The notes below the pieces were generated by a model. It had not been told where the DNA came from and did no database searches. It was given only the letters and a program-made list of their open reading frames with translations. Positions 2,795-44,803 of a stretch of 64,000 bases of DNA are shown one piece after another. The translations under genes were made by a program, and so were the position numbers. Positions within the stretch are counted from its first letter, which is position 1. Every line of letters starts with the position of its first letter. Where the stretch lies: IMG/VR virus record IMGVR_UViG_3300042482_000702, positions 248,001-312,000 of that record; one strand, written 5' to 3'.

Positions 2795-4153
2795 TTAGAA
2801 CCCTAGTTCTGACAAATCAAAATCATCAAAGTCGTCATCACCGTAGTCTTCGTTATCATCATCGGAACCCATTTTTTCATCGTATTCGTCTTTTTTCAAA
2901 TCTTCAGTAATTTCATTTACCATTCTTTGAATAAATTCACCGCCTTTTGGGTCACCTTCTAAAATTAATTTAGCTACTCTCATAAATTCTGCTGCCGATA
3001 ATTTTGAAAATCTAACAAATAAGTAATGTTGGATATGTTTCATATCATCTTCAAATAATTTGTCCGGATATGATTCTATAAATTTCTCCCAAAATATTGG
3101 ACCTAATCTAGAATCCCATACCTCAGCAGGTAAAGTATCTTCAGAACCTAAAACCATTTCAGCTTGTCTTGGGTCATCAGGTAAACCGTGAGTACCAAAA
3201 ACTTCATAAACACCTTTCACTAATTCGTGAATTAATAAAGGGAATGTCATTGCTTTTGCTTTAACTGTTGGTGGGTCGGTTTCTTCATCAACTTCACTTT
3301 GACCCATTTGACCACCACCTCCGGCTGCCATACCTTCCATATCAGGATATAACCAATATAAATGTTCCATTAAGGATTGTGTGACACCATAAAGGTTTAA
3401 TAAATTAGGGTCTAATCTATTAATTTCATCACTAAGTAAAACATACATATGTCCACCTTTAAATGCTGCTCCTTGTATAAGAGAATTAATCATTCTTCTT
3501 TTTGCCTTCTCTAAATTGAATTGTTCAAATTCGTCGGCAAAATCTTGTAATTCTTCACTATGTTCTTCAGCCTTTTTGAAGGCGTCTTTAACTTCTTCTT
3601 CACTAGGTTGTGTTGGTTCTGCTTGCATTCCTTGAGCGGCACCCATTGGTCGTTGGATAAGTTGAGCGTCAAATTGTAAAGACCCTTCAGGTATACCCAA
3701 TTCTTTTTTAACCAAATTAACAGCCAAATTCTCAAGATATTCTTTATTTTGAGATTCAACTCTCATAATTTGTTGTAGACTATTCATTACGGTTTGCATA
3801 ATGTTCATCATAGGGTTATTTCCTTGTATAGCGGAAGTATCACCCAAATAACGTCTTACCTTATCTACAGAGTCTTTAAAACGTTTTGAGGATATAACCT
3901 CAATATAATCAGTTTCACCATCGTTTGGTAATGCCGGATGTTCAGCGTAAGGAGTTTGTCTTGAAGTTATTTTTCTCTCGATTCCCGGTTCCATTCTTTC
4001 CGGACCTTCATAGCTAATAGGAGCCTCTTTTAAATTAGATTTAATTTCATTTAAAATTAACTGTTCTTTTTTTGTTAAACCTTCGTTAACTAATTTTTTT
4101 TCTAAATTCGCCTTTGATTTCAATATCTTTTCCATTTTTAAATTTACACTCAT
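2795..4153 (-). CDS. Hypothetical protein, probably virion-associated
   Basis: 452-aa ORF in the same-strand block upstream of terL; acidic tail. Confidence 0.7.
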   Translation of the reverse strand: MSVNLKMEKILKSKANLEKKLVNEGLTKKEQLILNEIKSNLKEAPISYEGPERMEPGIERKITSRQTPYAEHPALPNDGETDYIEVISSKRFKDSVDKVRRYLGDTSAIQGNNPMMNIMQTVMNSLQQIMRVESQNKEYLENLAVNLVKKELGIPEGSLQFDAQLIQRPMGAAQGMQAEPTQPSEEEVKDAFKKAEEHSEELQDFADEFEQFNLEKAKRRMINSLIQGAAFKGGHMYVLLSDEINRLDPNLLNLYGVTQSLMEHLYWLYPDMEGMAAGGGGQMGQSEVDEETDPPTVKAKAMTFPLLIHELVKGVYEVFGTHGLPDDPRQAEMVLGSEDTLPAEVWDSRLGPIFWEKFIESYPDKLFEDDMKHIQHYLFVRFSKLSAAEFMRVAKLILEGDPKGGEFIQRMVNEITEDLKKDEYDEKMGSDDDNEDYGDDDFDDFDLSELGF

Positions 4154-5100
4154 TACCCTTTAAGTTTAATACCTATTTCATTAAAAGACAACCAACTTGG
4201 TAAATTCTTTTTAATTGCTTTTGGAGCTGGTTTAGGTCCTGGTTTTGGACTATATGGTGACCCCGGTTTTTTAGGTTTTGTTCCCGGTTTAACCGTTGGT
4301 CTTGCCGGAGCAATTTCAGGAGATTGTTCACCAATTTCTTTTTTCGCCTTTGGAGCTGGTTTAACACCAGGTTTAGGTTTGTATGGAGAATCAGTTCCCG
4401 GTTTTGTTGTTGGTTTAACTTTTGGTTTTGCAGGGGCAGTTTCTGACCCTTCATCTAAAAGACTTAAAAAATCTTTTTTACTCATTTTTGGAGTAATGTG
4501 TTTCTCAACTAATTTTGTAATTCTATTTTCCAATTCACTTACAAATTTAGGGTTTGGTTGGACTTGTCCTACTTTATTTGACATAATTTTAGTGTGTGCG
4601 TTTTGTACCATATCTAAATAACCTTCTTTAGTTTCTGTTTTCTTTTCGGGTAGTTTAGCAAAGTTAGTATCTTTTGAGAATTCATCAGCCATTTTACACC
4701 ATTTTTTTTGTTCTTTGGTTTTTCCATCACCACATTTAGCGAAGAAATATTTTTGTTGTTTTTTAGATTCAAATTTTTCATCTACTTCACCTTCAACCGT
4801 TTCGTCTTTTTCAGACACAACTGTTAATTTTTTAGTTGCCGGGTCTATACTCATTGGAACACCTTTTTTAGCCATCAAATCTTGAGCTGCTTTTCTATCA
4901 GTATCTACCGCTGGGTCAAATGTAGTTGTTGTGGAGGTTTTTGTAACTGATTCTTTAGTATCTTTTTTAGATTCCGCTAATTTACCAAATAATAAATTAA
5001 CTTGAGATTCACTTAAATTTTCTAAAGTGGATGGTTTTAATCCGTGACCAATTAACTTTAATTTTTTTTGATTAGTGTTCATATATAATTGTTTTTTCAA
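4153..5100 (-). CDS. Hypothetical Lys/Pro-rich protein with duplicated SPYxPKPGxKPAPKA
   Basis: ORF track; internal repeat; the true start may be the second Met. Confidence 0.65.
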   Translation of the reverse strand: MKKQLYMNTNQKKLKLIGHGLKPSTLENLSESQVNLLFGKLAESKKDTKESVTKTSTTTTFDPAVDTDRKAAQDLMAKKGVPMSIDPATKKLTVVSEKDETVEGEVDEKFESKKQQKYFFAKCGDGKTKEQKKWCKMADEFSKDTNFAKLPEKKTETKEGYLDMVQNAHTKIMSNKVGQVQPNPKFVSELENRITKLVEKHITPKMSKKDFLSLLDEGSETAPAKPKVKPTTKPGTDSPYKPKPGVKPAPKAKKEIGEQSPEIAPARPTVKPGTKPKKPGSPYSPKPGPKPAPKAIKKNLPSWLSFNEIGIKLKG

Positions 5101-13531: not shown

Positions 13532-13940
13532 GGGAGTGACACGGAATTGACTATTCGTAATAGTTATTCGGGGCACGTAGTGAGATGTTCTCTATCACTT
13601 AAATCTATGGGTACAACAATTTAGACGGAAACGTTTTAAACAAAATGGCTCTAGTAGGTCTTGTACGTCAAGATGAGCTTGTGAACGTAGCGTAAGCAAA
13701 CACACATTGGGGTCGACGGATATGTGTACCTAGCAACAGAAATATCTTAAGGTGTGATACCACCCGAAGAGTGTCAAGGTCTCGTTTGAGGGTCTACCTA
13801 TTAAAGTGAACCTCCCACAGTTGTAGGTAATGATGGAAAAATTAGAACCTTCTATTTGTCAGTTGAGAATTAACTGAATAAACGTGTAGTCCTTAATAGG
13901 TAATACAAATAACACTTGGGTTCGAGTCCCAACACTTCCA
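13532..13940 (+). ncRNA. ssrA: tmRNA
   Basis: Acceptor GGGAGTG/CACTTCC with G3-U70; 5' GGAATTGAC; T-arm TTGGG-TTCGAGT-CCCAA; internal tag ORF 13627..13695; smpB nearby. Confidence 0.92.
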
Positions 13941-14065
13941 CGTCCACTGGAGAGTCCCAACACCTCCACACAAAAAAGAGACCTAAATGGTCTCTTTTTT
14001 TATTGATAATCACCAATAAAAAAACCACCCGAAGGTGGCTTATTATCAGTTCAAATGTTTATTTT

Positions 14066-14998: not shown

Positions 14999-15883
14999 GG
15001 CTTAATACGATGAGAATACTCGTCTTATTGAGAATCTTCGGAAGGATTATTGTTTCCCTTCGTTTCCACCATCTTTTGAATGGTAACCCTCATTGCCGAT
15101 TGGTTAGACCAATCACTCCTTGAGATATCATCTACTCTCTCATTATTCAACTCTCTTTAACCTTGCGAGCTAACTCCGGATTCGACTCCGTAGAGGTTTT
15201 TGGCGAGAATACATTCAGACTTGCGGTCATCCTGTGCAACGAACGGCTCGTTACTATGTAGGCAACTTGTCGACGATACCTGGTAAACATTTTTGCTATT
15301 GTCTATTTAGTTTTTCACCATATGAAAATAGTTAATGTGTTGTGGATGTATTCAGGAAGTAGTTTACCGTAAGCTCCCTAACCTTTTGGGTTAAAGAATA
15401 CTAAACTTCCCGATGAGATATCCCTATCTCCAAATTTCAAGAATTCTTCAAATCAATATCTTGGTAGATATTTGATAGGGATAAAGTCAGCACCACCTGT
15501 TACTTAATCTTGCCTTTCGGCGTTAAGATTCCTTTTATTTTGGAACCCGCAATTATAAGGTCGGATAACCCTATTTCTTACTTGATTCCTATGGGTTCTT
15601 CTTATCTTGATTCCTCAATCAACCGGACAATCCACATTGCCAAGTTAGTATTCCATTTCCCTACGAAGTTATCCTCGGTACTACAGGACTACTAATATCC
15701 CACTTGCTTACTCGAGTTCGGTTTCCCAAACCACAAAATCACTAACACAAATGATTTCATTTTATCCCCGTTTCCGGGATTATTTAAAGATGATAAGCCA
15801 CCTATTATCTTTGATACAACACCGAAGTGTTATAATGGATAATCTAAAATTTCTAAGAACGTCTTTAAGGTTTCCCTTAATTG
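14963..15883 (-). ncRNA. Large (~920 nt) structured ncRNA, GOLLD-like candidate
   Basis: No credible ORF; own TAnnTTTG promoter (15889-15896) and terminator; many minus-strand GNRA/UUCG-capped hairpins. Confidence 0.7.
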
Positions 15884-39782: not shown

Positions 39783-40430
39783 TTATTTTAACCATTTTCT
39801 AACAGCGTTATCACTAACACCATATTTACGACCTGTTCCTCTATACCCAAGATTAATAATATCTTGTTTTATTTGTTCTATGGACGGTCTTTCAACTTTT
39901 CTATTTTGTTTATTTGAACATTTAATACATTTATCACTTTTTTTATCTTTTGTACTACCACATTCACAATGATATTTAATTTTATTGGATTTCCCGGAAT
40001 ATGTACTAGTTTGGGAGTGACAATTAGGACATAAAAATCTTAAATTTTCTATTCTATTATCATTATTAACTCCATTTATATGGTCTAAATGTAGACTAAT
40101 ATTTTTACCATTCCACACCCCATTATTACCACATTCAATACATTTATATTCAAGTAAATTTTTCTTTAATATTCTATTTTTAATTTTTTGTCTTGGAAAT
40201 GTTGAATTTTCAACAAAAACATCCTCATCTAATCTAACCTCTTTAGGTCCAGTCCCATAATAATTATATTTAGGAATCTCTAATCCCAATTTAATTATTC
40301 TATCTTTAATGTTCCTATAACCACCCGAACCATTTGGTGATAAATTAAATAATAAAATAACCTCTCTCATAGATTTTGAATTATTCAAAATTTCAAATAA
40401 CTCTTCTTTTGTAATAGTTTTTAAGTTCAT
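39783..40430 (-). CDS. HNH homing endonuclease inside the tRNA array
   Basis: CIECG...LHLDHINGVNNDNRIENLRFLCPNCHSQT; C-terminal HTH. Confidence 0.9.
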   Translation of the reverse strand: MNLKTITKEELFEILNNSKSMREVILLFNLSPNGSGGYRNIKDRIIKLGLEIPKYNYYGTGPKEVRLDEDVFVENSTFPRQKIKNRILKKNLLEYKCIECGNNGVWNGKNISLHLDHINGVNNDNRIENLRFLCPNCHSQTSTYSGKSNKIKYHCECGSTKDKKSDKCIKCSNKQNRKVERPSIEQIKQDIINLGYRGTGRKYGVSDNAVRKWLK

Positions 40431-40661: not shown

Positions 40662-40744
40662 AGTTCAGGGTCGGATTCGAACCGACGAGGACTTTCGTCA
40701 TTGGTTTTGCAGACCAATCTAATCAACCACTCTAGCACCTGAAC
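40662..40744 (-). tRNA. tRNA-Cys(GCA) with long variable arm
   Basis: Loop CTGCAAA; U73; GAC-GAAA-GTC variable hairpin. Confidence 0.88.
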
Positions 40745-40805
40745 ATTTAAAGTAAAATATAATTTACAAATACACCCATTTTTGTAAATTATATTTAATG
40801 TTAAT

Positions 40806-41186
40806 TTAATAACCTATTTCATCTTTAACCTCCCATTGTTTATCAATGGGGATTCTTTCAATCTTTTCCACCGGAACAAATCCGTCAAATCCTTTGTCTT
40901 TAACATCTTCAAAATGTTCTATGGTGTCCAAGTAAAATCCAAATTGATATCTAACGTATTGGAACTTCTCTCCGTCCCAATAAGCGACGTGGTTGTTTCT
41001 ACAGAAACCATTATACCACCCCTCAACCATTTCATTTTTTGGTATCATCATTTCTATTTTTATATTAGCACCCTTGTCTATATAGCCTGAATCTCTCAAG
41101 CGCCATGCCTTATTAGGGTCTCTATATAAACTTAGGGTCACGTAGTTACTGGATGAACCCAAATAACTTACTTGCTGAGAACTCAT
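40806..41186 (-). CDS. Hypothetical protein (true start probably downstream, near MIPKNEM)
   Basis: ORF; the annotated 5' end overlaps an RNA motif. Confidence 0.55.
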   Translation of the reverse strand: MSSQQVSYLGSSSNYVTLSLYRDPNKAWRLRDSGYIDKGANIKIEMMIPKNEMVEGWYNGFCRNNHVAYWDGEKFQYVRYQFGFYLDTIEHFEDVKDKGFDGFVPVEKIERIPIDKQWEVKDEIGY

Positions 41187-41250
41187 TTGTGTTGATAGAG
41201 GCGTTCTCTATACGTTTAATTTACCTATTCCTTTCTCAAGGGAACAACAC
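41171..41250 (-). ncRNA. Pseudoknotted scaffold RNA, copy A
   Basis: GTGTTGTTCCCTTGAGAAAGGAA-[insert]-AACACAAATGAGTTCTCAG. Confidence 0.65.
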
Positions 41251-41547
41251 ATCTACCATTTCTGATAGTATCTTTATGTAAATAACCAAGACAATTGTAC
41301 AAATGCTACCACGTATTTCTTTGGTTCACTTATTATTTACAAAGGTTTCAATGTTTAACCTATTTTTACAACGATACAATTACATTTCTACTTTTGAGAA
41401 TCTTTCTCAAAAAAACTAATCTTTTTCTATGATTAACATACTCATCAGCATCATTGGCTTTATGACCTCTAAATATTGATTCGGTTATCTCACAATCCAA
41501 TTTAATAATTTCGGTTATTATCTCCTCCGTGGTTAAATTACTTTTTT

Positions 41548-41871
41548 TCATATCTTCTCAAATTCGTCTTCAAATCCGTACCACTCATCACCATTTTCAT
41601 CTTCGTACCAACATTTGTATTCTCGCTCGTACCGATTCCAATCAATTCTTGTTAATTCAACTTCATTTCCCCCATCTTTGTTTATAACCACTTCACCCAC
41701 TTGGAATGTTTGTGGTGCGTAATTGTCGATTGTTTTACTTTGAATAATTAAATCTCCAACACTTTTAACCTCATCGGTTTGGATATTGGTGTAATTTCCT
41801 CCGGATGATAATTTCCACCCTTTACTATACAACCAAATCGTAAAATCTAAAATTTCTTTTTCTAATAACAT
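41548..41871 (-). CDS. Hypothetical protein
   Basis: ORF downstream of a TAnnTTTG promoter at about 41893. Confidence 0.55.
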   Translation of the reverse strand: MLLEKEILDFTIWLYSKGWKLSSGGNYTNIQTDEVKSVGDLIIQSKTIDNYAPQTFQVGEVVINKDGGNEVELTRIDWNRYEREYKCWYEDENGDEWYGFEDEFEKI

Positions 41872-41903
41872 AATACATCTGTTTTGTGAGTACAAAGATA
41901 ATA

Positions 41904-42236
41904 CTATTTTTTACCCAATCCTACAATCGTAACACTTTTAATCTTTTTTTTACCTTTTTTAACTTTTTTCTCAACTTTTGGTTGGGAAACTCTACTTTGT
42001 TTCGCCAATACCTTCCTTGTTCTTTTACACATTTTTTCTAAAATCTCCAATGATTCAAGATTCTTAAAGAAAACAGTTAGAAGTTCTTCCGATTCGTCTG
42101 AAGAATAAATATTATCACCAATCATTCTTGGTTTTAATAATTTATTAAAACTAATAAATGGTGTTTGAGTAATATTCTCAATTCCCGCACCCATAGACAA
42201 TTCTCCCAATCCCGCAACAACAATACTTTTTTTCAT
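41904..42236 (-). CDS. Hypothetical protein
   Basis: ORF track. Confidence 0.55.
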   Translation of the reverse strand: MKKSIVVAGLGELSMGAGIENITQTPFISFNKLLKPRMIGDNIYSSDESEELLTVFFKNLESLEILEKMCKRTRKVLAKQSRVSQPKVEKKVKKGKKKIKSVTIVGLGKK

Positions 42237-42297
42237 AATTTTTATATATTTAATTTCGACAAAGATAATACAATTTTTTAAACTACCAAACTTTATT

Positions 42298-42807
42298 TTA
42301 AAAAAATAAATAAGGTTCCCATTCTTTTGGGATATCGTGATGAACTTGTTTCATTAACATCAGATAATGTGGTCGTCTTGGTTGAGGTATGTCTTTACCA
42401 TATTCCTCTAACGTCAAATTGGACTTCTCACCGTTACATCTCCTACAAGCGGTAACCAAGTTGTCCCAACTATCTTTACCCCCCTTAGATTGGGGTACTA
42501 CATGGTCTAATGTTAATGTCTTTCTGTTATTACACCCACAATATACACATTCAAAGTTATCTCTACGATAAACATTCTCTCTATTTAAAGGAACTTTTTG
42601 TATGATTTGATTAACATACTTATATACCCGAATGATTGATGGTTTTTTGATGTCCAATTCAGGATTTACTAATTTGAATGATTCCGGATGTTCGTTTATA
42701 ACATCGGCATTACCTTTATAAGAAATGACGAAAGCCCTCTCTGTGGAAATAATACTCCTCGCCATGAAACTTGAATCTAAAACCAAAGTTTTTTGGTAAC
42801 TACTCAC
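42298..42807 (-). CDS. HNH endonuclease (McrA-like)
   Basis: RDNFECVYCG...TLDHVVPQSKGGKDSWDNLVTACRRCN. Confidence 0.9.
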   Translation of the reverse strand: MSSYQKTLVLDSSFMARSIISTERAFVISYKGNADVINEHPESFKLVNPELDIKKPSIIRVYKYVNQIIQKVPLNRENVYRRDNFECVYCGCNNRKTLTLDHVVPQSKGGKDSWDNLVTACRRCNGEKSNLTLEEYGKDIPQPRRPHYLMLMKQVHHDIPKEWEPYLFF

Positions 42808-42837
42808 GATTTCTAATTTTTAATTAAACATTTTTTT

Positions 42838-43437
42838 TTACTCTAAACTATCAGGATAGTATAAAAGTGTTGGATTTTTCTTTTGGATGTCTATCTCCGG
42901 AAATTTTTCTTGGAATTTTCTAACATCAAATTTTCTGGTAATTAAATGAACACCATTTTTTGTTGGGATGACAGCCTCAACTTTATCACCAACCGGTTGT
43001 AAAACAATTAGAAATTTTGACACTTCAAAAAGAGTATCAAAATCTTTAGTATCAATATCTACAATCCATCTTTTTTCCTGTGTCTTAATTTGACCCACAA
43101 CCGAATCAAATAAACCTTTTTGGTTTTGAACCCCATTTTTGATTCTCTCAGCAAGAAGTGCTAACATATCCAAAGATACATCACGATGATTTTGTTTTTG
43201 GATGTGGATGTAAGCTCTCGCTTTAAACATCTCACATAATTGGATAATCTCATCATACCTTTTCTCCAAATGCTCAATACTATCAATACAGTAAGTTTTA
43301 ATTGTTCTTACTGATTGGTGATTGTCCCTCTCATCGATGGGTTGGTCTTTTTTACGCTTAAAAACATATAACATATAAAAATCACCCTTTTCGGAGAAAT
43401 TTAACAATGGTTTCAGTTGTTCGATGTTGTTTATCAT
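42838..43437 (-). CDS. Conserved phage protein with AEP/PrimPol-like DxD and TxxGxH motifs
   Basis: WIVDIDTKD and PTKNGVHLI. Confidence 0.5.
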   Translation of the reverse strand: MINNIEQLKPLLNFSEKGDFYMLYVFKRKKDQPIDERDNHQSVRTIKTYCIDSIEHLEKRYDEIIQLCEMFKARAYIHIQKQNHRDVSLDMLALLAERIKNGVQNQKGLFDSVVGQIKTQEKRWIVDIDTKDFDTLFEVSKFLIVLQPVGDKVEAVIPTKNGVHLITRKFDVRKFQEKFPEIDIQKKNPTLLYYPDSLE

Positions 43438-43453
43438 TATTTCTATTTTTTTG

Positions 43454-43524
43454 TTCCCCCAGGTGGTATCGAACCAACTTCCCGATATTAAAAGTATCGT
43501 GCTTCACCTTAAAGCTTTGGGGGA
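43454..43524 (-). tRNA. tRNA-Lys(TTT)
   Basis: Loop CTTTTAA. Confidence 0.88.
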
Positions 43525-43606
43525 GTTTGAGCTCATTTCACTTTGTTATTTGGCTCAAAACATAACTAATTTGAGCTTAATAATCAAAGTTTGTGAGCCA
43601 CATTTG

Positions 43607-43678
43607 TTGTTCCGGTAGGATTTGAACCTACGACCGCTGAAGTATCAGTTCAGAACTCTACCGCTGAGTTACGGAACA
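43607..43678 (-). tRNA. tRNA-Ile(GAT)
   Basis: Loop CTGATAC. Confidence 0.9.
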
Positions 43679-43684
43679 ATATTG

Positions 43685-43756
43685 TCGGGATAGCAGGGGT
43701 CGAACCTGCCGCCTCTTGGTCCCAAACCAAGCGTCTCACCCCAAGACTATATCCCG
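43685..43756 (-). tRNA. tRNA-Pro(TGG)
   Basis: C1-G72; loop TTTGGGA. Confidence 0.9.
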
Positions 43757-43827
43757 AATAATAAACTACCACCTGACTCTTTTCGAACTTTGCAGGCTCG
43801 TATCATTCCCTAATGGTAGTTATTTTG

Positions 43828-43901
43828 TCTAAATGACTGGACTCGAACCAGCGGTCTCTACATTCCAAGTGTAGCGGATTAACCAACTTTCCCACATCTA
43901 G
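43828..43901 (-). tRNA. tRNA-Pro(TGG), second copy
   Basis: Loop CTTGGAA (A37 instead of G37). Confidence 0.85.
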
Positions 43902-43920
43902 ATTTTAATTTTATTTTCTG

Positions 43921-44006
43921 CGGAGAGCAGAATACTTGAAATCCATCCCTTTTACAGAACCACTCGCTTAGCAGGCGGTGACAATACCCTGATTGTTTTA
44001 CTCTCC
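43921..44006 (-). tRNA. tRNA-Ser(GCT)
   Basis: Loop CTGCTAA; long variable arm; G73. Confidence 0.8.
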
Positions 44007-44012
44007 ATTTTG

Positions 44013-44084
44013 TGTCCCCAAGAGGATTCGAACCCCTATCTCTGATGCCGTAAATCAAAATTCTATCCGTTGAACTATGGTGAC
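44013..44084 (-). tRNA. tRNA-Arg(ACG)
   Basis: Loop TTACGGC. Confidence 0.8.
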
Positions 44085-44088
44085 AATT

Positions 44089-44208
44089 TGAGGTTGAGAA
44101 CTCCTCTGTGTTGTGTGTTTAAGACTAACTTTTTATACACTAAATAGGACTTACGCAAGTAGGTTGGCCTAATTTTAATACTTAATTCCCCTCTCACAGG
44201 AACAACAC
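44089..44208 (-). ncRNA. Pseudoknotted scaffold RNA, copy B
   Basis: GTGTTGTTCCTGTGAGAGGGGAA-[~73 nt]-AACACAGAGGAGTTCTCAACCTCA. Confidence 0.65.
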
Positions 44209-44213
44209 GGCTG

Positions 44214-44303
44214 TGAGGTTGAGAACTCCTCTGTGTTAGTCTTTACTAGTTAATTGCAATAACCGTGTAGCCACTCTATTTTCCCCTCTCACAGGAACAA
44301 CAC
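44214..44303 (-). ncRNA. Pseudoknotted scaffold RNA, copy C
   Basis: Same 23-nt and 24-nt flanks as copy B, with a different ~43-nt insert. Confidence 0.65.
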
Positions 44304-44306
44304 ATT

Positions 44307-44495
44307 TTACTTCCATTGAGTTTTTCGGTTATACTTCCAAGTTTTATGTTCTCTGTATTTGTGAGAGAACTGACCTCTTCTATAATGAACACCCTCATCC
44401 CAATAAGGTGGATATTCAAACTTTAACCAAATTACTCTGTAATCTTTGGAACAAGTTGCCTTGTTCAGTTTCATTCTGTTTGTGTTTACACTCAT
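44307..44495 (-). CDS. Small basic hypothetical protein
   Basis: C-terminal TWKYNRKTQWK. Confidence 0.6.
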   Translation of the reverse strand: MSVNTNRMKLNKATCSKDYRVIWLKFEYPPYWDEGVHYRRGQFSHKYREHKTWKYNRKTQWK

Positions 44496-44545
44496 AATCT
44501 TGAGTCTGTTGTTTAGCAGACCTCAAAGATTATCCAATACCTTTT

Positions 44546-44803
44546 TCATAACCGTAATTTATAAATTCTTTTATAATCATCCATCGCCGACTTCAGATTT
44601 ACAATACATTCTCGGTAATTAACATTATCACCAAGATTAAATCTTTCATTTTCTTGTTCCCTCTTGAATAACACTTTCAATGAATTATCAATGTTAGATA
44701 GAATGTCCAAGTAAATCATTTCCTTATCTTTGGATTTTTTTAAATCAAATTTCAAATCAACAATTAGACCTTCTAATTCTTCAATTTTTTTATCTTCATC
44801 CAT
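44546..44803 (-). CDS. Small coiled-coil protein
   Basis: ORF track. Confidence 0.55.
   Translation of the reverse strand: MDEDKKIEELEGLIVDLKFDLKKSKDKEMIYLDILSNIDNSLKVLFKREQENERFNLGDNVNYRECIVNLKSAMDDYKRIYKLRL

What the first reader, a model, noticed from the sequence alone, without database searches (positions are those of the whole stretch)
41171..44303. Three-copy pseudoknotted RNA scaffold carrying interchangeable inserts
Minus-strand consensus: GTGTTG-TTCC-(Y)KTGAGAR(R)-GGAA-[34/73/43-nt unrelated insert]-AACAC-ARAKGAG-TTCTCA. GTGTTG pairs with (C/T)AACAC, TTCC with GGAA, and the loop TGAGA forms a pseudoknot with the 3' TCTCA. Copies B and C are tandem with identical flanks, and copy A is diverged but keeps the pairings. 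A constant scaffold with a variable loop is the layout of guide or antisense RNAs, and an McrA-like HNH and an AEP-like gene lie between copies A and B. The insert of B also has 9 nt complementary to copy C (AAGACTAAC/GTTAGTCTT). I recognise no family.
Basis: partly seen in the sequence, partly recalled or inferred. Interest (0 to 1): 0.85.

Follow-up and report, generated by a model that had tools for sequence, protein, structure and literature searches.

The report
Phage pseudoknotted RNA beside tRNA genes
The three repeats are copies of a compact, knotted RNA fold that occurs hundreds of times in uncultured phage genomes, usually just in front of phage tRNA genes or inside a longer abundant phage RNA; it matches no described RNA family and its job is unknown.

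Summary

The element belongs to a large, phage-restricted RNA family. No Rfam 15 family matches, even with the laxest filters.

It comes in two forms:
- Type 1 (window copies B and C) is a roughly 90-130 nt unit. A 3' hairpin loop kisses the conserved loop. The unit sits 4-8 nt upstream of a tRNA-shaped gene in 47 of 76 unique cases, and often 4 nt after another tRNA.
- Type 2 (copy A) has the same core embedded in a 233-478 nt structured RNA (window 41361-41065). Its homologue in Cellulophaga crAss-like phage phi14:2 lies in an intergenic region reported as an abundant, persistent long non-coding RNA.

The "inserts" are a hypervariable peripheral stem, not guides. They fold, they covary, and they have no targets. 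No protein partner is conserved nearby; the common neighbours are homing endonucleases.

My best reading is a stable RNA cut out of tRNA-island transcripts that acts through its invariant pseudoknot face. The function is inferred, not shown. A new self-cleaving ribozyme is not excluded.

The parts
44213..44303 (-). Copy C, a type 1 unit. P1 5' strand 44303-44298; P2 hairpin with loop L2 (TGTGAGAGG) 44297-44281; variable P3 region 44280-44239; P1 3' strand TAACAC 44238-44233; linker A 44232; P4 hairpin GAGG/CCTC with loop AGTTCTCAA 44231-44215.
   Evidence: Sequence, pattern match, CM hit of 63.4 bits. The same P3 insert occurs in L089 (type 1) and L024 (type 2), with an A-U to G-C compensatory change in its hairpin.
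44088..44208 (-). Copy B, a type 1 unit immediately upstream of tRNA-Arg. P1 5' strand 44208-44203; P2 hairpin 44202-44186; long P3 region 44185-44114; P1 3' strand CAACAC 44113-44108; linker A 44107; P4 hairpin 44106-44090; tail AA 44089-44088. Three further nt (44087-44085) separate the unit from the tRNA.
   Evidence: Sequence and pattern match. The default CM filter missed it because of the 72-nt insertion. The tRNA starts at 44084.
44012..44084 (-). tRNA-Arg(ACG). Its 5' end lies 5 nt after the P4 stem of copy B. It is the first of a five-tRNA run (Arg, Pro, Pro, Ile, Lys).
   Evidence: ARAGORN; Rfam tRNA model, 50.4 bits.
41174..41250 (-). Copy A, the core module of the long type 2 RNA. 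P1 5' strand 41250-41245; P2 hairpin with consensus loop CTTGAGAAA 41244-41228; P3 hairpin region 41227-41195; P1 3' strand 41194-41189; linker AAATGAG 41188-41182; pseudoknot 3' strand TTCTCA 41181-41176.
   Evidence: Sequence, CM hit of 68 bits. The same P3 insert occurs in both a type 1 and a type 2 element of contig L028.
41065..41361 (-). The whole type 2 RNA (about 297 nt). 5' hairpin with conserved loop AAACATTGA 41361-41343; stem TGTAAAT/ATTTACA enclosing a variable region 41341-41277; GNRA hairpin CTATCA-GAAA-TGGTAG 41268-41253; core (copy A); stem P5 41172-41141; long stem P6 ACCCT.../...AGGGT 41138-41070; 3' tail GCTAA 41069-41065.
   Evidence: Thirty-four unique full-length relatives of 233-478 nt share the same ends and order of parts. 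All six GNRA-hairpin pairs covary. The P5 and P6 stems and the 5' hairpin stem change in a compensatory way between loci. The homologue in phage phi14:2 is at L121 2912-3360.
40806..41186 (-). A mechanical ORF whose first roughly 40 codons lie inside the type 2 RNA. It is probably not translated from this ATG; a later ATG at 41051 is the more likely start.
   Evidence: ORF list. The ATG sits in the conserved linker AAATGAG, and the reading frame after it is not conserved in relatives. No Pfam hit.

Best explanation
The repeats are genes for a phage-specific structured RNA.

The core fold has these parts:
- A 6-7 bp closing helix P1.
- A 4-bp hairpin P2 that follows P1 directly. Its 9-nt loop (CUUGAGAAA) is nearly invariant.
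- A 3' segment UUCUCA, 1-7 nt after P1, that pairs with the P2 loop within the same molecule.

In type 1 units (B, C) that 3' segment is the loop of a small hairpin, so the contact is a kissing loop that closes the fold. In type 2 (A) the same core is buttressed by extra 5' and 3' domains, giving an RNA of about 300 nt.

Biogenesis (inferred from anatomy): the units are co-transcribed with the phage tRNA island. They are released by the enzymes that mature the flanking tRNAs or tmRNA. RNase P cutting at the downstream tRNA 5' end makes the unit's 3' end. Trimming of the upstream tRNA's 3' end makes the unit's 5' end.

Action (inferred, not shown): the released RNA is a stable molecule. It works through the invariant pseudoknot face by binding a conserved partner, most likely a host factor, because no phage protein travels with it. 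P3 is a tolerated decoration, not a targeting sequence.
For: The CM gives 262 hits in 235 loci and 213 unique sequences.

Structure:
- In the sample anchored only on the 3' hairpin, 97.3% of cells are paired, against at most 59.4% with slid partners. Eight pairs carry double changes, against 1.6 in shuffles. All 4 P2 pairs and 4 of 7 P1 pairs are compensated.
- In the 5'-anchored sample, 93.8% are paired, against at most 53.5%.
- Examples: L198 has P1 AUGCUG/CAGCAU and P2 UCUU/AAGA; phi14:2 has P2 UCAC/GUGG.
- Many one-sided changes give G-U pairs, which fit only this strand.

Pseudoknot:
- L126 and L127 have loop UUGAUAA with partner UUAUCA.
- L130 has UUUAGAA with UUCUAG.
- L111 has two coupled changes.
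- L127 and L111 each also carry an unchanged copy, so the compensation is within one molecule.

tRNA punctuation:
- 47 of 76 unique type 1 units are followed within 4-8 nt by a gene with acceptor and T arms, against 25 of 445 random positions.
- 24 of 80 have a tRNA 3' end about 4 nt upstream.
- No opposite-strand tRNA lies nearby.
- Type 2 is followed by a tRNA or tmRNA in several loci.

Stable RNA: the phi14:2 homologue lies in one of two long intergenic regions reported as transcribed above most genes, early and without later decline (bioRxiv 10.1101/2020.03.07.982082).

No fixed protein neighbour. The element is phage-restricted: only 12 hits in 185,579 species genomes, all in MAG contigs.
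Against: - No experiment here shows the ends, the stability or any partner of type 1 units.
- Mapping the published 'g004-g005' region onto GenBank coordinates 2905-3589 is my inference from gene order.
- About 38% of type 1 units are not directly followed by a recognisable tRNA.
- phi14:2 carries type 2 with no adjacent tRNA, so tRNA punctuation cannot be the only route to the RNA.
- Near-invariance of the stems as well as the loops could also reflect gene conversion driven by the neighbouring homing endonucleases, rather than recognition by a partner.
- A cis role and a catalytic role fit the same anatomy.
Confidence: 0.5

Rival explanations
1. The unit is a cis-acting leader. It acts only on its own transcript. 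It could keep neighbouring tRNAs from misfolding, present the downstream tRNA to RNase P, shield the precursor's 5' end from nucleases, or let RNA polymerase read through a long untranslated RNA island, as put or nut elements do.
For: The spacing to the downstream tRNA 5' end is tight and narrow (4-8 nt). Units are wedged between tRNAs. There are several units per island. Many of the downstream tRNA-shaped genes are unusually long (95-190 nt) and might need help.
Against: The same core sits in the middle of a 233-478 nt RNA that is often followed by an ORF. In phi14:2 that RNA is not next to a tRNA. A third of type 1 units have no tRNA directly downstream. A pure spacer or insulator would not need a nearly invariant loop sequence.
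Confidence: 0.2
2. The unit is a new class of small self-cleaving ribozyme that cuts tRNA-island transcripts, for example at its own 5' edge 4 nt after the upstream tRNA.
For: The profile is typical of small ribozymes: an invariant pseudoknotted core, a hypervariable peripheral stem, several copies per genome (sometimes in tandem), no associated protein, and a phage and tRNA context. There is precedent from established knowledge, not tested here: HDV-like theta ribozymes next to phage tRNAs.
Against: No known ribozyme model matches. Few conserved unpaired nucleotides lie outside the pseudoknot. The core sits in the middle of an abundant long RNA, which cleavage would split. No cleavage data exist.
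Confidence: 0.12
3. The unit is a DNA-level element. On this view the conserved 23-mer is a homing-endonuclease target or a mobile repeat, and the RNA structure is incidental.
For: HNH and GIY-YIG endonuclease genes are the commonest neighbours. Identical P3 inserts appear in different contexts, which suggests recombination or gene conversion.
Against: Compensatory changes occur in three helices and in the pseudoknot. One-sided changes make G-U pairs but would be A-C on the other strand. Orientation is strictly the same as the tRNAs. Being an endonuclease target could be a secondary consequence of conservation.
Confidence: 0.05
4. The unit is a ligand-binding aptamer or riboswitch-like sensor.
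For: It has a compact pseudoknotted junction with invariant nucleotides. In copy A an ATG lies in the linker beside the pseudoknot strand.
Against: Type 1 units precede tRNAs, not ORFs. There is no terminator or start-codon logic in type 1. The ORF after copy A is not conserved.
Confidence: 0.04
5. The unit is a programmable guide or antisense RNA: a constant scaffold presenting a variable targeting insert to an effector.
For: The inserts are extremely diverse while the scaffold is constant. There is a 9-nt B/C complementarity.
Against: The inserts fold and covary as stems. They have no matches elsewhere in the window or in GenBank phages. No effector gene is conserved nearby, and there is no reverse transcriptase or Cas-like gene. 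The 9-mer is reached by 2.4% of shuffles.
Confidence: 0.03

Closest known systems
The unnamed abundant 'long non-coding RNA' of Cellulophaga crAss-like phage phi14:2 (Drobysheva et al., bioRxiv 10.1101/2020.03.07.982082)
   Same: By my mapping, this published RNA is the type 2 homologue. It has the same 5' hairpin loop, GNRA hairpin, core with pseudoknot, and GGGUGCUAA 3' end (L121 2912-3360).
   Different: The paper reports only expression (early, high, persistent). It gives no structure, family or function. The assignment of its 'g004-g005 junction' to these coordinates is my inference.
GOLLD and ROOL RNAs
   Same: Both are phage or prophage structured RNAs of unknown function that lie near tRNAs (PMC5737381). 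GOLLD is present in this same window (15007-15413) and in related loci.
   Different: There is no sequence or model similarity. The present RNA is much smaller. It is modular, with a roughly 60-nt core used alone or embedded. It abuts tRNA ends directly.
HDV-like 'theta' ribozymes and other small self-cleaving ribozymes (pistol, hammerhead, twister, hatchet)
   Same: They share a compact pseudoknotted core, hypervariable peripheral stems, and multiple copies in phage genomes next to tRNAs.
   Different: The topology fits none of them. There is no P2 or P1.1 double pseudoknot. The variable stem lies between the conserved hairpin and the P1 3' strand. There is no CUGANGA/GAAA core. No Rfam ribozyme model matches. 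Cleavage is untested.
Stable RNAs processed out of phage tRNA clusters (T4 species 1 and 2 RNAs; from established knowledge)
   Same: They are small stable RNAs encoded inside a phage tRNA cluster, co-oriented with it, and released by tRNA-processing enzymes. Their function is unknown.
   Different: The T4 RNAs are not known to share this fold.
UG27 reverse-transcriptase ncRNA arrays in Bacteroidota phages (bioRxiv 10.64898/2026.09.22.753630)
   Same: They are phage-encoded arrays of pseudoknotted units of similar size with variable sequence.
   Different: Those units sit next to a reverse transcriptase and two accessory genes and have little primary-sequence conservation. Here there is no RT, the core is nearly invariant, and tRNAs flank the unit.
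Flavivirus-type exonuclease-resistant RNAs
   Same: They share a three-way junction in which a hairpin loop pairs with sequence just 3' of the closing helix, followed by a hairpin, giving a closed ring-like topology.
   Different: A different hairpin supplies the loop, and there is no evidence for the 5'-end pseudoknot. This resemblance is recalled from memory and was not tested.

Membership tests
Any Rfam 15 family | Covariance-model score at or near the family's gathering threshold. | tested here: not met
   There is no hit over the three copies at gathering thresholds. At E<=10 over 40700-44700 only tRNAs appear. With the laxest filters on 44085-44310 and 41040-41370, only noise at 11-16 bits, or nothing, is returned. 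The phi14:2 homologue is also unmatched.
HDV-like / theta ribozymes | Nested double pseudoknot. The P3 3' strand is followed directly by the P1 3' strand. P2 pairs the segment after P1 with the 3' end. The variable P4 comes after P1. | tested here: not met
   Here the variable stem lies between the conserved hairpin and the P1 3' strand, and there is no P2. No HDV-type model matches.
HDV-like / theta ribozymes | Self-cleavage at the 5' edge of P1. | not testable with these tools
   This needs in-vitro transcription. The 4-nt gap after upstream tRNAs is compatible with it but is not evidence for it.
Pistol ribozyme | A free-standing P1 hairpin whose loop pairs with the internal loop between P2 and P3, with a G-U cleavage site. 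| tested here: not met
   The conserved hairpin is nested inside the closing helix, and its partner lies outside that helix. There is no model hit.
Hammerhead ribozyme | A three-way junction with conserved CUGANGA and GAAA junction strands. | tested here: not met
   The junction strands are 0 nt, a variable A-rich stretch, and a single A. There is no model hit.
GOLLD / ROOL | A match to the family model. | tested here: not met
   GOLLD is found elsewhere in the window at 288 bits, but nothing is found at these loci.
GOLLD / ROOL | A phage context close to tRNA genes. | tested here: met
   This is a shared context, not membership.
UG27 RT-associated ncRNA arrays | An adjacent reverse transcriptase plus two accessory genes. 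| tested here: not met
   No RT domain occurs among the window ORFs or among the ten most recurrent neighbour families I scanned.
Guide RNAs (crRNA, tracrRNA-like, omega RNA, bridge RNA) | A variable segment that is complementary to targets and is presented single-stranded. | tested here: not met
   The inserts fold (mean z of -1.0, and hairpins with compensatory changes). The window's inserts have no match in the window or in GenBank phages. Host genomes could not be searched.
Guide RNAs (crRNA, tracrRNA-like, omega RNA, bridge RNA) | A conserved effector gene next to the RNA. | tested here: not met
   No protein family occurs in more than 14 of 122 neighbourhoods.
Stable RNAs released from tRNA clusters by tRNA processing | Co-oriented with tRNAs and separated from them by only a few nucleotides on one or both sides. 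| tested here: met
   47 of 76 units have a tRNA-shaped gene starting 4-8 nt downstream, against 25 of 445 controls. 24 of 80 have a tRNA end about 4 nt upstream. In the window, copy B ends 3 nt before tRNA-Arg.
Stable RNAs released from tRNA clusters by tRNA processing | Accumulation as a discrete processed RNA. | not testable with these tools
   There is only indirect support for type 2, from published phi14:2 RNA-seq.

The most novel reading that the evidence does not exclude
The core is a new class of small self-cleaving ribozyme. Phages would use it, alone or embedded in a larger RNA, to cut their tRNA-island transcripts, complementing RNase P at the downstream tRNA.
Probability: 0.12. 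Interest if true: 0.9.

Novelty: categorically new. Interest (0 to 1): 0.72.

Why it matters
A fold this conserved, this widespread and this phage-specific very probably does something important during infection.

- The loop is invariant in 76 of 77 independently sampled units.
- There are more than 200 distinct copies.
- The element is essentially absent from cellular genomes.
- No described RNA family matches it.

The finding gives a structure and a family to an abundant RNA of unknown function in phi14:2, the model crAss-like phage. It adds a third, much smaller and modular member to the unexplained set of phage RNAs that live beside tRNAs (GOLLD, ROOL).

It is also directly testable, because phi14:2 and its host are in culture. 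If the RNA proves catalytic, it would be a new natural ribozyme class. If it binds a host factor, it would be a new RNA-based takeover or counter-defence device.

Tried and rejected
- Rfam at three sensitivities gave nothing.
- Single-sequence folding gave energies no better than shuffles, so it is uninformative.
- GenBank phage BLAST found only tRNA matches, plus the phi14:2 type 2 homologue.
- Literature string searches for the motifs returned only primers and unrelated sequences.
- The catalogue of 10,006 viral candidate RNAs (PMC10690425) could not be checked, because its supplements are not held.
- UG27 RT arrays were considered and rejected.
- Gene-neighbourhood clustering found no partner. 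The commonest unannotated neighbour family turned out to be an HNH endonuclease.
- The window's 199-aa gene is unrelated to that family.
- Trans-kissing between copies, as an explanation for loop invariance, was rejected. Two contigs each hold one consensus copy and one internally compensated variant copy.
- Complementarity of the loop to the 16S 3' end, and resemblance to RNase P, T-arm or tetraloop-receptor motifs, were considered by eye. I dropped them because covarying relatives break the match.
- Sigma-70 promoter and terminator scans gave counts no different from shuffles.
- The short 'ORF' starting in copy A is not conserved.

Full report
**Observation.** On the minus strand the 23-nt motif GTGTTGTTCC-NN-TGAGA-RR-GGAA occurs three times, at 41250, 44208 and 44303. 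Shuffles give 0.02 expected. In each copy the sequence allows three pairings: GTGTTG with (C/T)AACAC, TTCC with GGAA, and loop TGAGA with a 3' TCTCA. Copies C (44303-44213) and B (44208-44088) are head-to-tail. B ends 3 nt before tRNA-Arg at 44084. Single-sequence folding is no better than shuffles, so everything below rests on comparison with relatives.

**A large family with no name.** No Rfam 15 family matches at any sensitivity. A second scan used only one common form of the 3' hairpin. It hit the limit again and brought 106 new loci. A covariance model built from 30 seeds finds 262 elements in 235 loci, 213 of them distinct. Twenty-three loci have 2-4 copies. In one genome from each of 185,579 prokaryotic species there are only 12 matches, all on MAG contigs. 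GenBank phages hold a single relative, in Cellulophaga phage phi14:2. The element is therefore essentially confined to uncultured phages. The one cultured host, and several of the MAG bins, are Bacteroidota.

**Structure.**
- The 3'-anchored sample is unbiased for P1, P2 and the loop. In it, 97.3% of cells pair, against at most 59.4% when partners are slid. Eight pairs show changes on both sides, against 1.6 in shuffles. All four P2 pairs and four of seven P1 pairs are compensated.
- The 5'-anchored sample gives 93.8% paired, against at most 53.5%.
- Striking single cases: L198 has P1 AUGCUG/CAGCAU and P2 UCUU/AAGA with the loop unchanged. phi14:2 has P2 UCAC/GUGG. L054 has GUGUUC/GAACAC.
- A seventh P1 pair joins the base before P1 to the base after it. 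It is U-A in 86 cases, C-G in 6 and A-U in 5.
- One-sided changes are mostly transitions that give G-U pairs. These fit this strand only.
- The loop is almost frozen. It is unchanged in 76 of 77 units of the unbiased sample. Three directed scans for loop variants returned nine loci, of which three are real elements.
- Those three, plus one found by the model, all carry the matching change on the 3' partner. UUGAUAA goes with UUAUCA, twice and independently. UUUAGAA goes with UUCUAG. L111 has a double change.
- L127 and L111 each also contain an unchanged copy, so the compensation is within one molecule.

In type 1 the 3' strand is the loop of a 4-5 bp hairpin that itself covaries (GAGG/CCUC, AAGG/CCUU, GAGGA/UCCUC, AAUG/CAUU). 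The contact is thus a kissing loop.

**The inserts.** The middle segment is 24-107 nt long. It falls into about 100 sequence families among 131 unique elements. It is modestly more foldable than shuffles. It usually closes with a short helix next to P1 (for example AGUG...CACU). It also shows compensatory changes inside insert families. For example, the hairpin in copy C's insert differs from its L089 counterpart by A-U to G-C. The window's inserts match nothing else in the window or in GenBank phages. Identical inserts turn up in different settings. Copy A's insert occurs in both a type 1 and a type 2 element of L028. Copy C's insert occurs in type 1 (L089) and type 2 (L024). I read the insert as a tolerated, recombining peripheral stem (P3), not a guide. 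The 9-nt B/C complementarity is reached by 2.4% of shuffles and cannot be tested further.

**Two architectures.** Type 1 (B, C) is the core plus the 3' hairpin. Type 2 (A) has the same core embedded in a longer RNA whose parts appear in a fixed order:
- a 5' hairpin with the invariant loop AAACAUUGA and a covarying stem;
- a stem enclosing a variable region;
- a GNRA hairpin in which all six pairs covary;
- the core;
- the linker AAAUGAG and the pseudoknot strand;
- an optional stem P5;
- a long stem P6;
- the 3' end GGGUGCUAA.

Thirty-four distinct full-length examples measure 233-478 nt. In the window this RNA spans 41361-41065. The mechanical ORF 40806-41186 starts inside it and is not conserved.

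**Expression.** The phi14:2 homologue lies at 2912-3360, under three tiny opposite-strand 'hypothetical' ORFs. Drobysheva et al. report that two long intergenic regions at this end of the genome are transcribed rightward. They are more abundant than most genes, they appear from the earliest time point, and they do not decline later. The authors call them long non-coding RNAs of unknown function. The second region holds a tmRNA-like gene scoring 46 bits against a threshold of 47. Assigning the first region to the type 2 RNA is my inference from gene order.

**Context.**
- All nearby tRNAs are co-oriented with the element.
- 47 of 76 unique type 1 units are followed 4-8 nt after the hairpin by a gene with acceptor and T arms. 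The rate at random positions in the same loci is 25 of 445.
- 24 of 80 have a tRNA 3' end about 4 nt upstream.
- Many of the downstream genes are unusually long and score weakly as tRNA.
- Type 2 is sometimes followed by a tRNA or tmRNA.
- No protein family recurs in more than 14 of 122 neighbourhoods. The recurrent families are HNH and GIY-YIG homing endonucleases, a cyclic-phosphate receiver domain and an RNase H-like protein.
- The window's HNH protein is an ordinary HNH. The 199-aa neighbour has no Pfam hit and only an unknown-function PHROG.

**Mechanism.** What is shown is a conserved, intramolecularly pseudoknotted RNA fold, its strand, its two architectures, and its placement against tRNA ends. 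The rest is inferred. I infer that the units are cut from tRNA-island transcripts by the tRNA-maturing enzymes, and that they persist as stable RNAs, as type 2 appears to do in phi14:2. I also infer that they act through the invariant pseudoknot face on a conserved partner. That partner is probably a host factor, since no phage protein co-occurs. I put this at about 0.5. The rivals are:
- a purely cis-acting leader (0.2);
- a new self-cleaving ribozyme (0.12);
- a DNA-level endonuclease target (0.05), which is contradicted by the G-U pattern;
- a ligand sensor (0.04);

Gene conversion promoted by the neighbouring homing endonucleases may contribute to the unusual sequence uniformity and to the shuffling of P3.

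**Comparison and novelty.** The closest things known are:
- the unnamed phi14:2 RNA, which is the same family in its type 2 form;
- GOLLD and ROOL, which share the context but not the fold;
- small ribozymes, which share the style but not the topology;
- T4's tRNA-cluster stable RNAs, which share the likely biogenesis;
- UG27 arrays, which depend on a reverse transcriptase that is absent here.

No defining feature of any named family is met. I therefore rate it a new RNA family and fold of unknown function.

**Limits.**
- Both samples were drawn with exact-match patterns and were capped.
- The type 2 helices other than the GNRA hairpin were judged from inspected examples, not from a formal test.
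- Host genomes could not be searched with the inserts.
- Nothing here measures RNA ends, stability, cleavage or binding.

Noticed in passing
window 15007-15413 (-), 13532-13943 (+), and about 24 tRNA genes between 16045 and 45929: The window carries a GOLLD RNA (288 bits), a phage tmRNA (62 bits) and a large tRNA island. Related loci also carry GOLLD, tmRNA, freshwater-1 RNA and a group I intron. The element therefore lives in a dense island of stable-RNA genes.
   Followed up: partly
L050:4949-5050, L078:10395-10517, L015:481-597, L026:4669-4764 and many others downstream of type 1 units: These are tRNA-shaped genes of 95-190 nt. They have a tRNA-Leu-like start (GTCAGGTGGCGGAATGGTAGACGC) and a normal T arm and acceptor, but an aberrant or greatly expanded middle. 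Some contain a second T-arm-like hairpin. ARAGORN often misses them, and Rfam tRNA scores only 31-42 bits.
   Followed up: partly
L121 (phi14:2, KC821624) 4031-4502 (+): An unannotated tmRNA-like gene, 46 bits against a threshold of 47, lies under four tiny 'hypothetical protein' ORFs (gp011-gp014). It probably accounts for the second abundant non-coding RNA reported for this phage.
   Followed up: partly
L046, L092, L104 (after the type 1 unit); L034, L051, L068, L074, L086, L105 (before a tRNA or tmRNA): There are further conserved modules in the same islands. One is a roughly 90-nt element containing CCCATACCGCTGACGATGGGCTAAG...GGGGAGTAGAA, lying between a type 1 unit and the next tRNA. Another is a short hairpin, AAGTGYCCTCACAYGAGGR, just upstream of tRNAs or tmRNA. 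Neither was analysed.
   Followed up: no
L143 and L211 (3' hairpin matches): The GAGGA-CTTCTCA-TCCTC hairpin occurs on its own directly after a tRNA, with no recognisable core upstream. These may be remnants or a minimal form.
   Followed up: no
window 43902-44011, 43757-43826 and 43525-43605 (-): The other spacers between the tRNAs of this run also look structured. Examples are GGAGAG...CTCTCC spanning about 90 nt, and AACTACCA...TGGTAGTT. The first is conserved in L028. None was analysed.
   Followed up: no
window 41343-41361 (-) and the equivalent 5' hairpin in all type 2 loci: The 5' hairpin, with its invariant 9-nt loop, marks the start of conservation. In phi14:2 this RNA is an early transcript, made by a virion RNA polymerase for which no promoter motif was found. 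Whether this hairpin acts at the DNA level as a start signal, as N4-type hairpin promoters do, rather than only in the RNA, is an open thought.
   Followed up: no
window 42298-42807 (-), 39783-40430 (-); L050:5131-5640 and ten relatives: Free-standing HNH endonuclease genes are scattered through the tRNA islands. One family of 140-200 aa has no Pfam hit, but its alignment shows the CxxC...HH...CxxCH motif. GIY-YIG genes also occur.
   Followed up: partly
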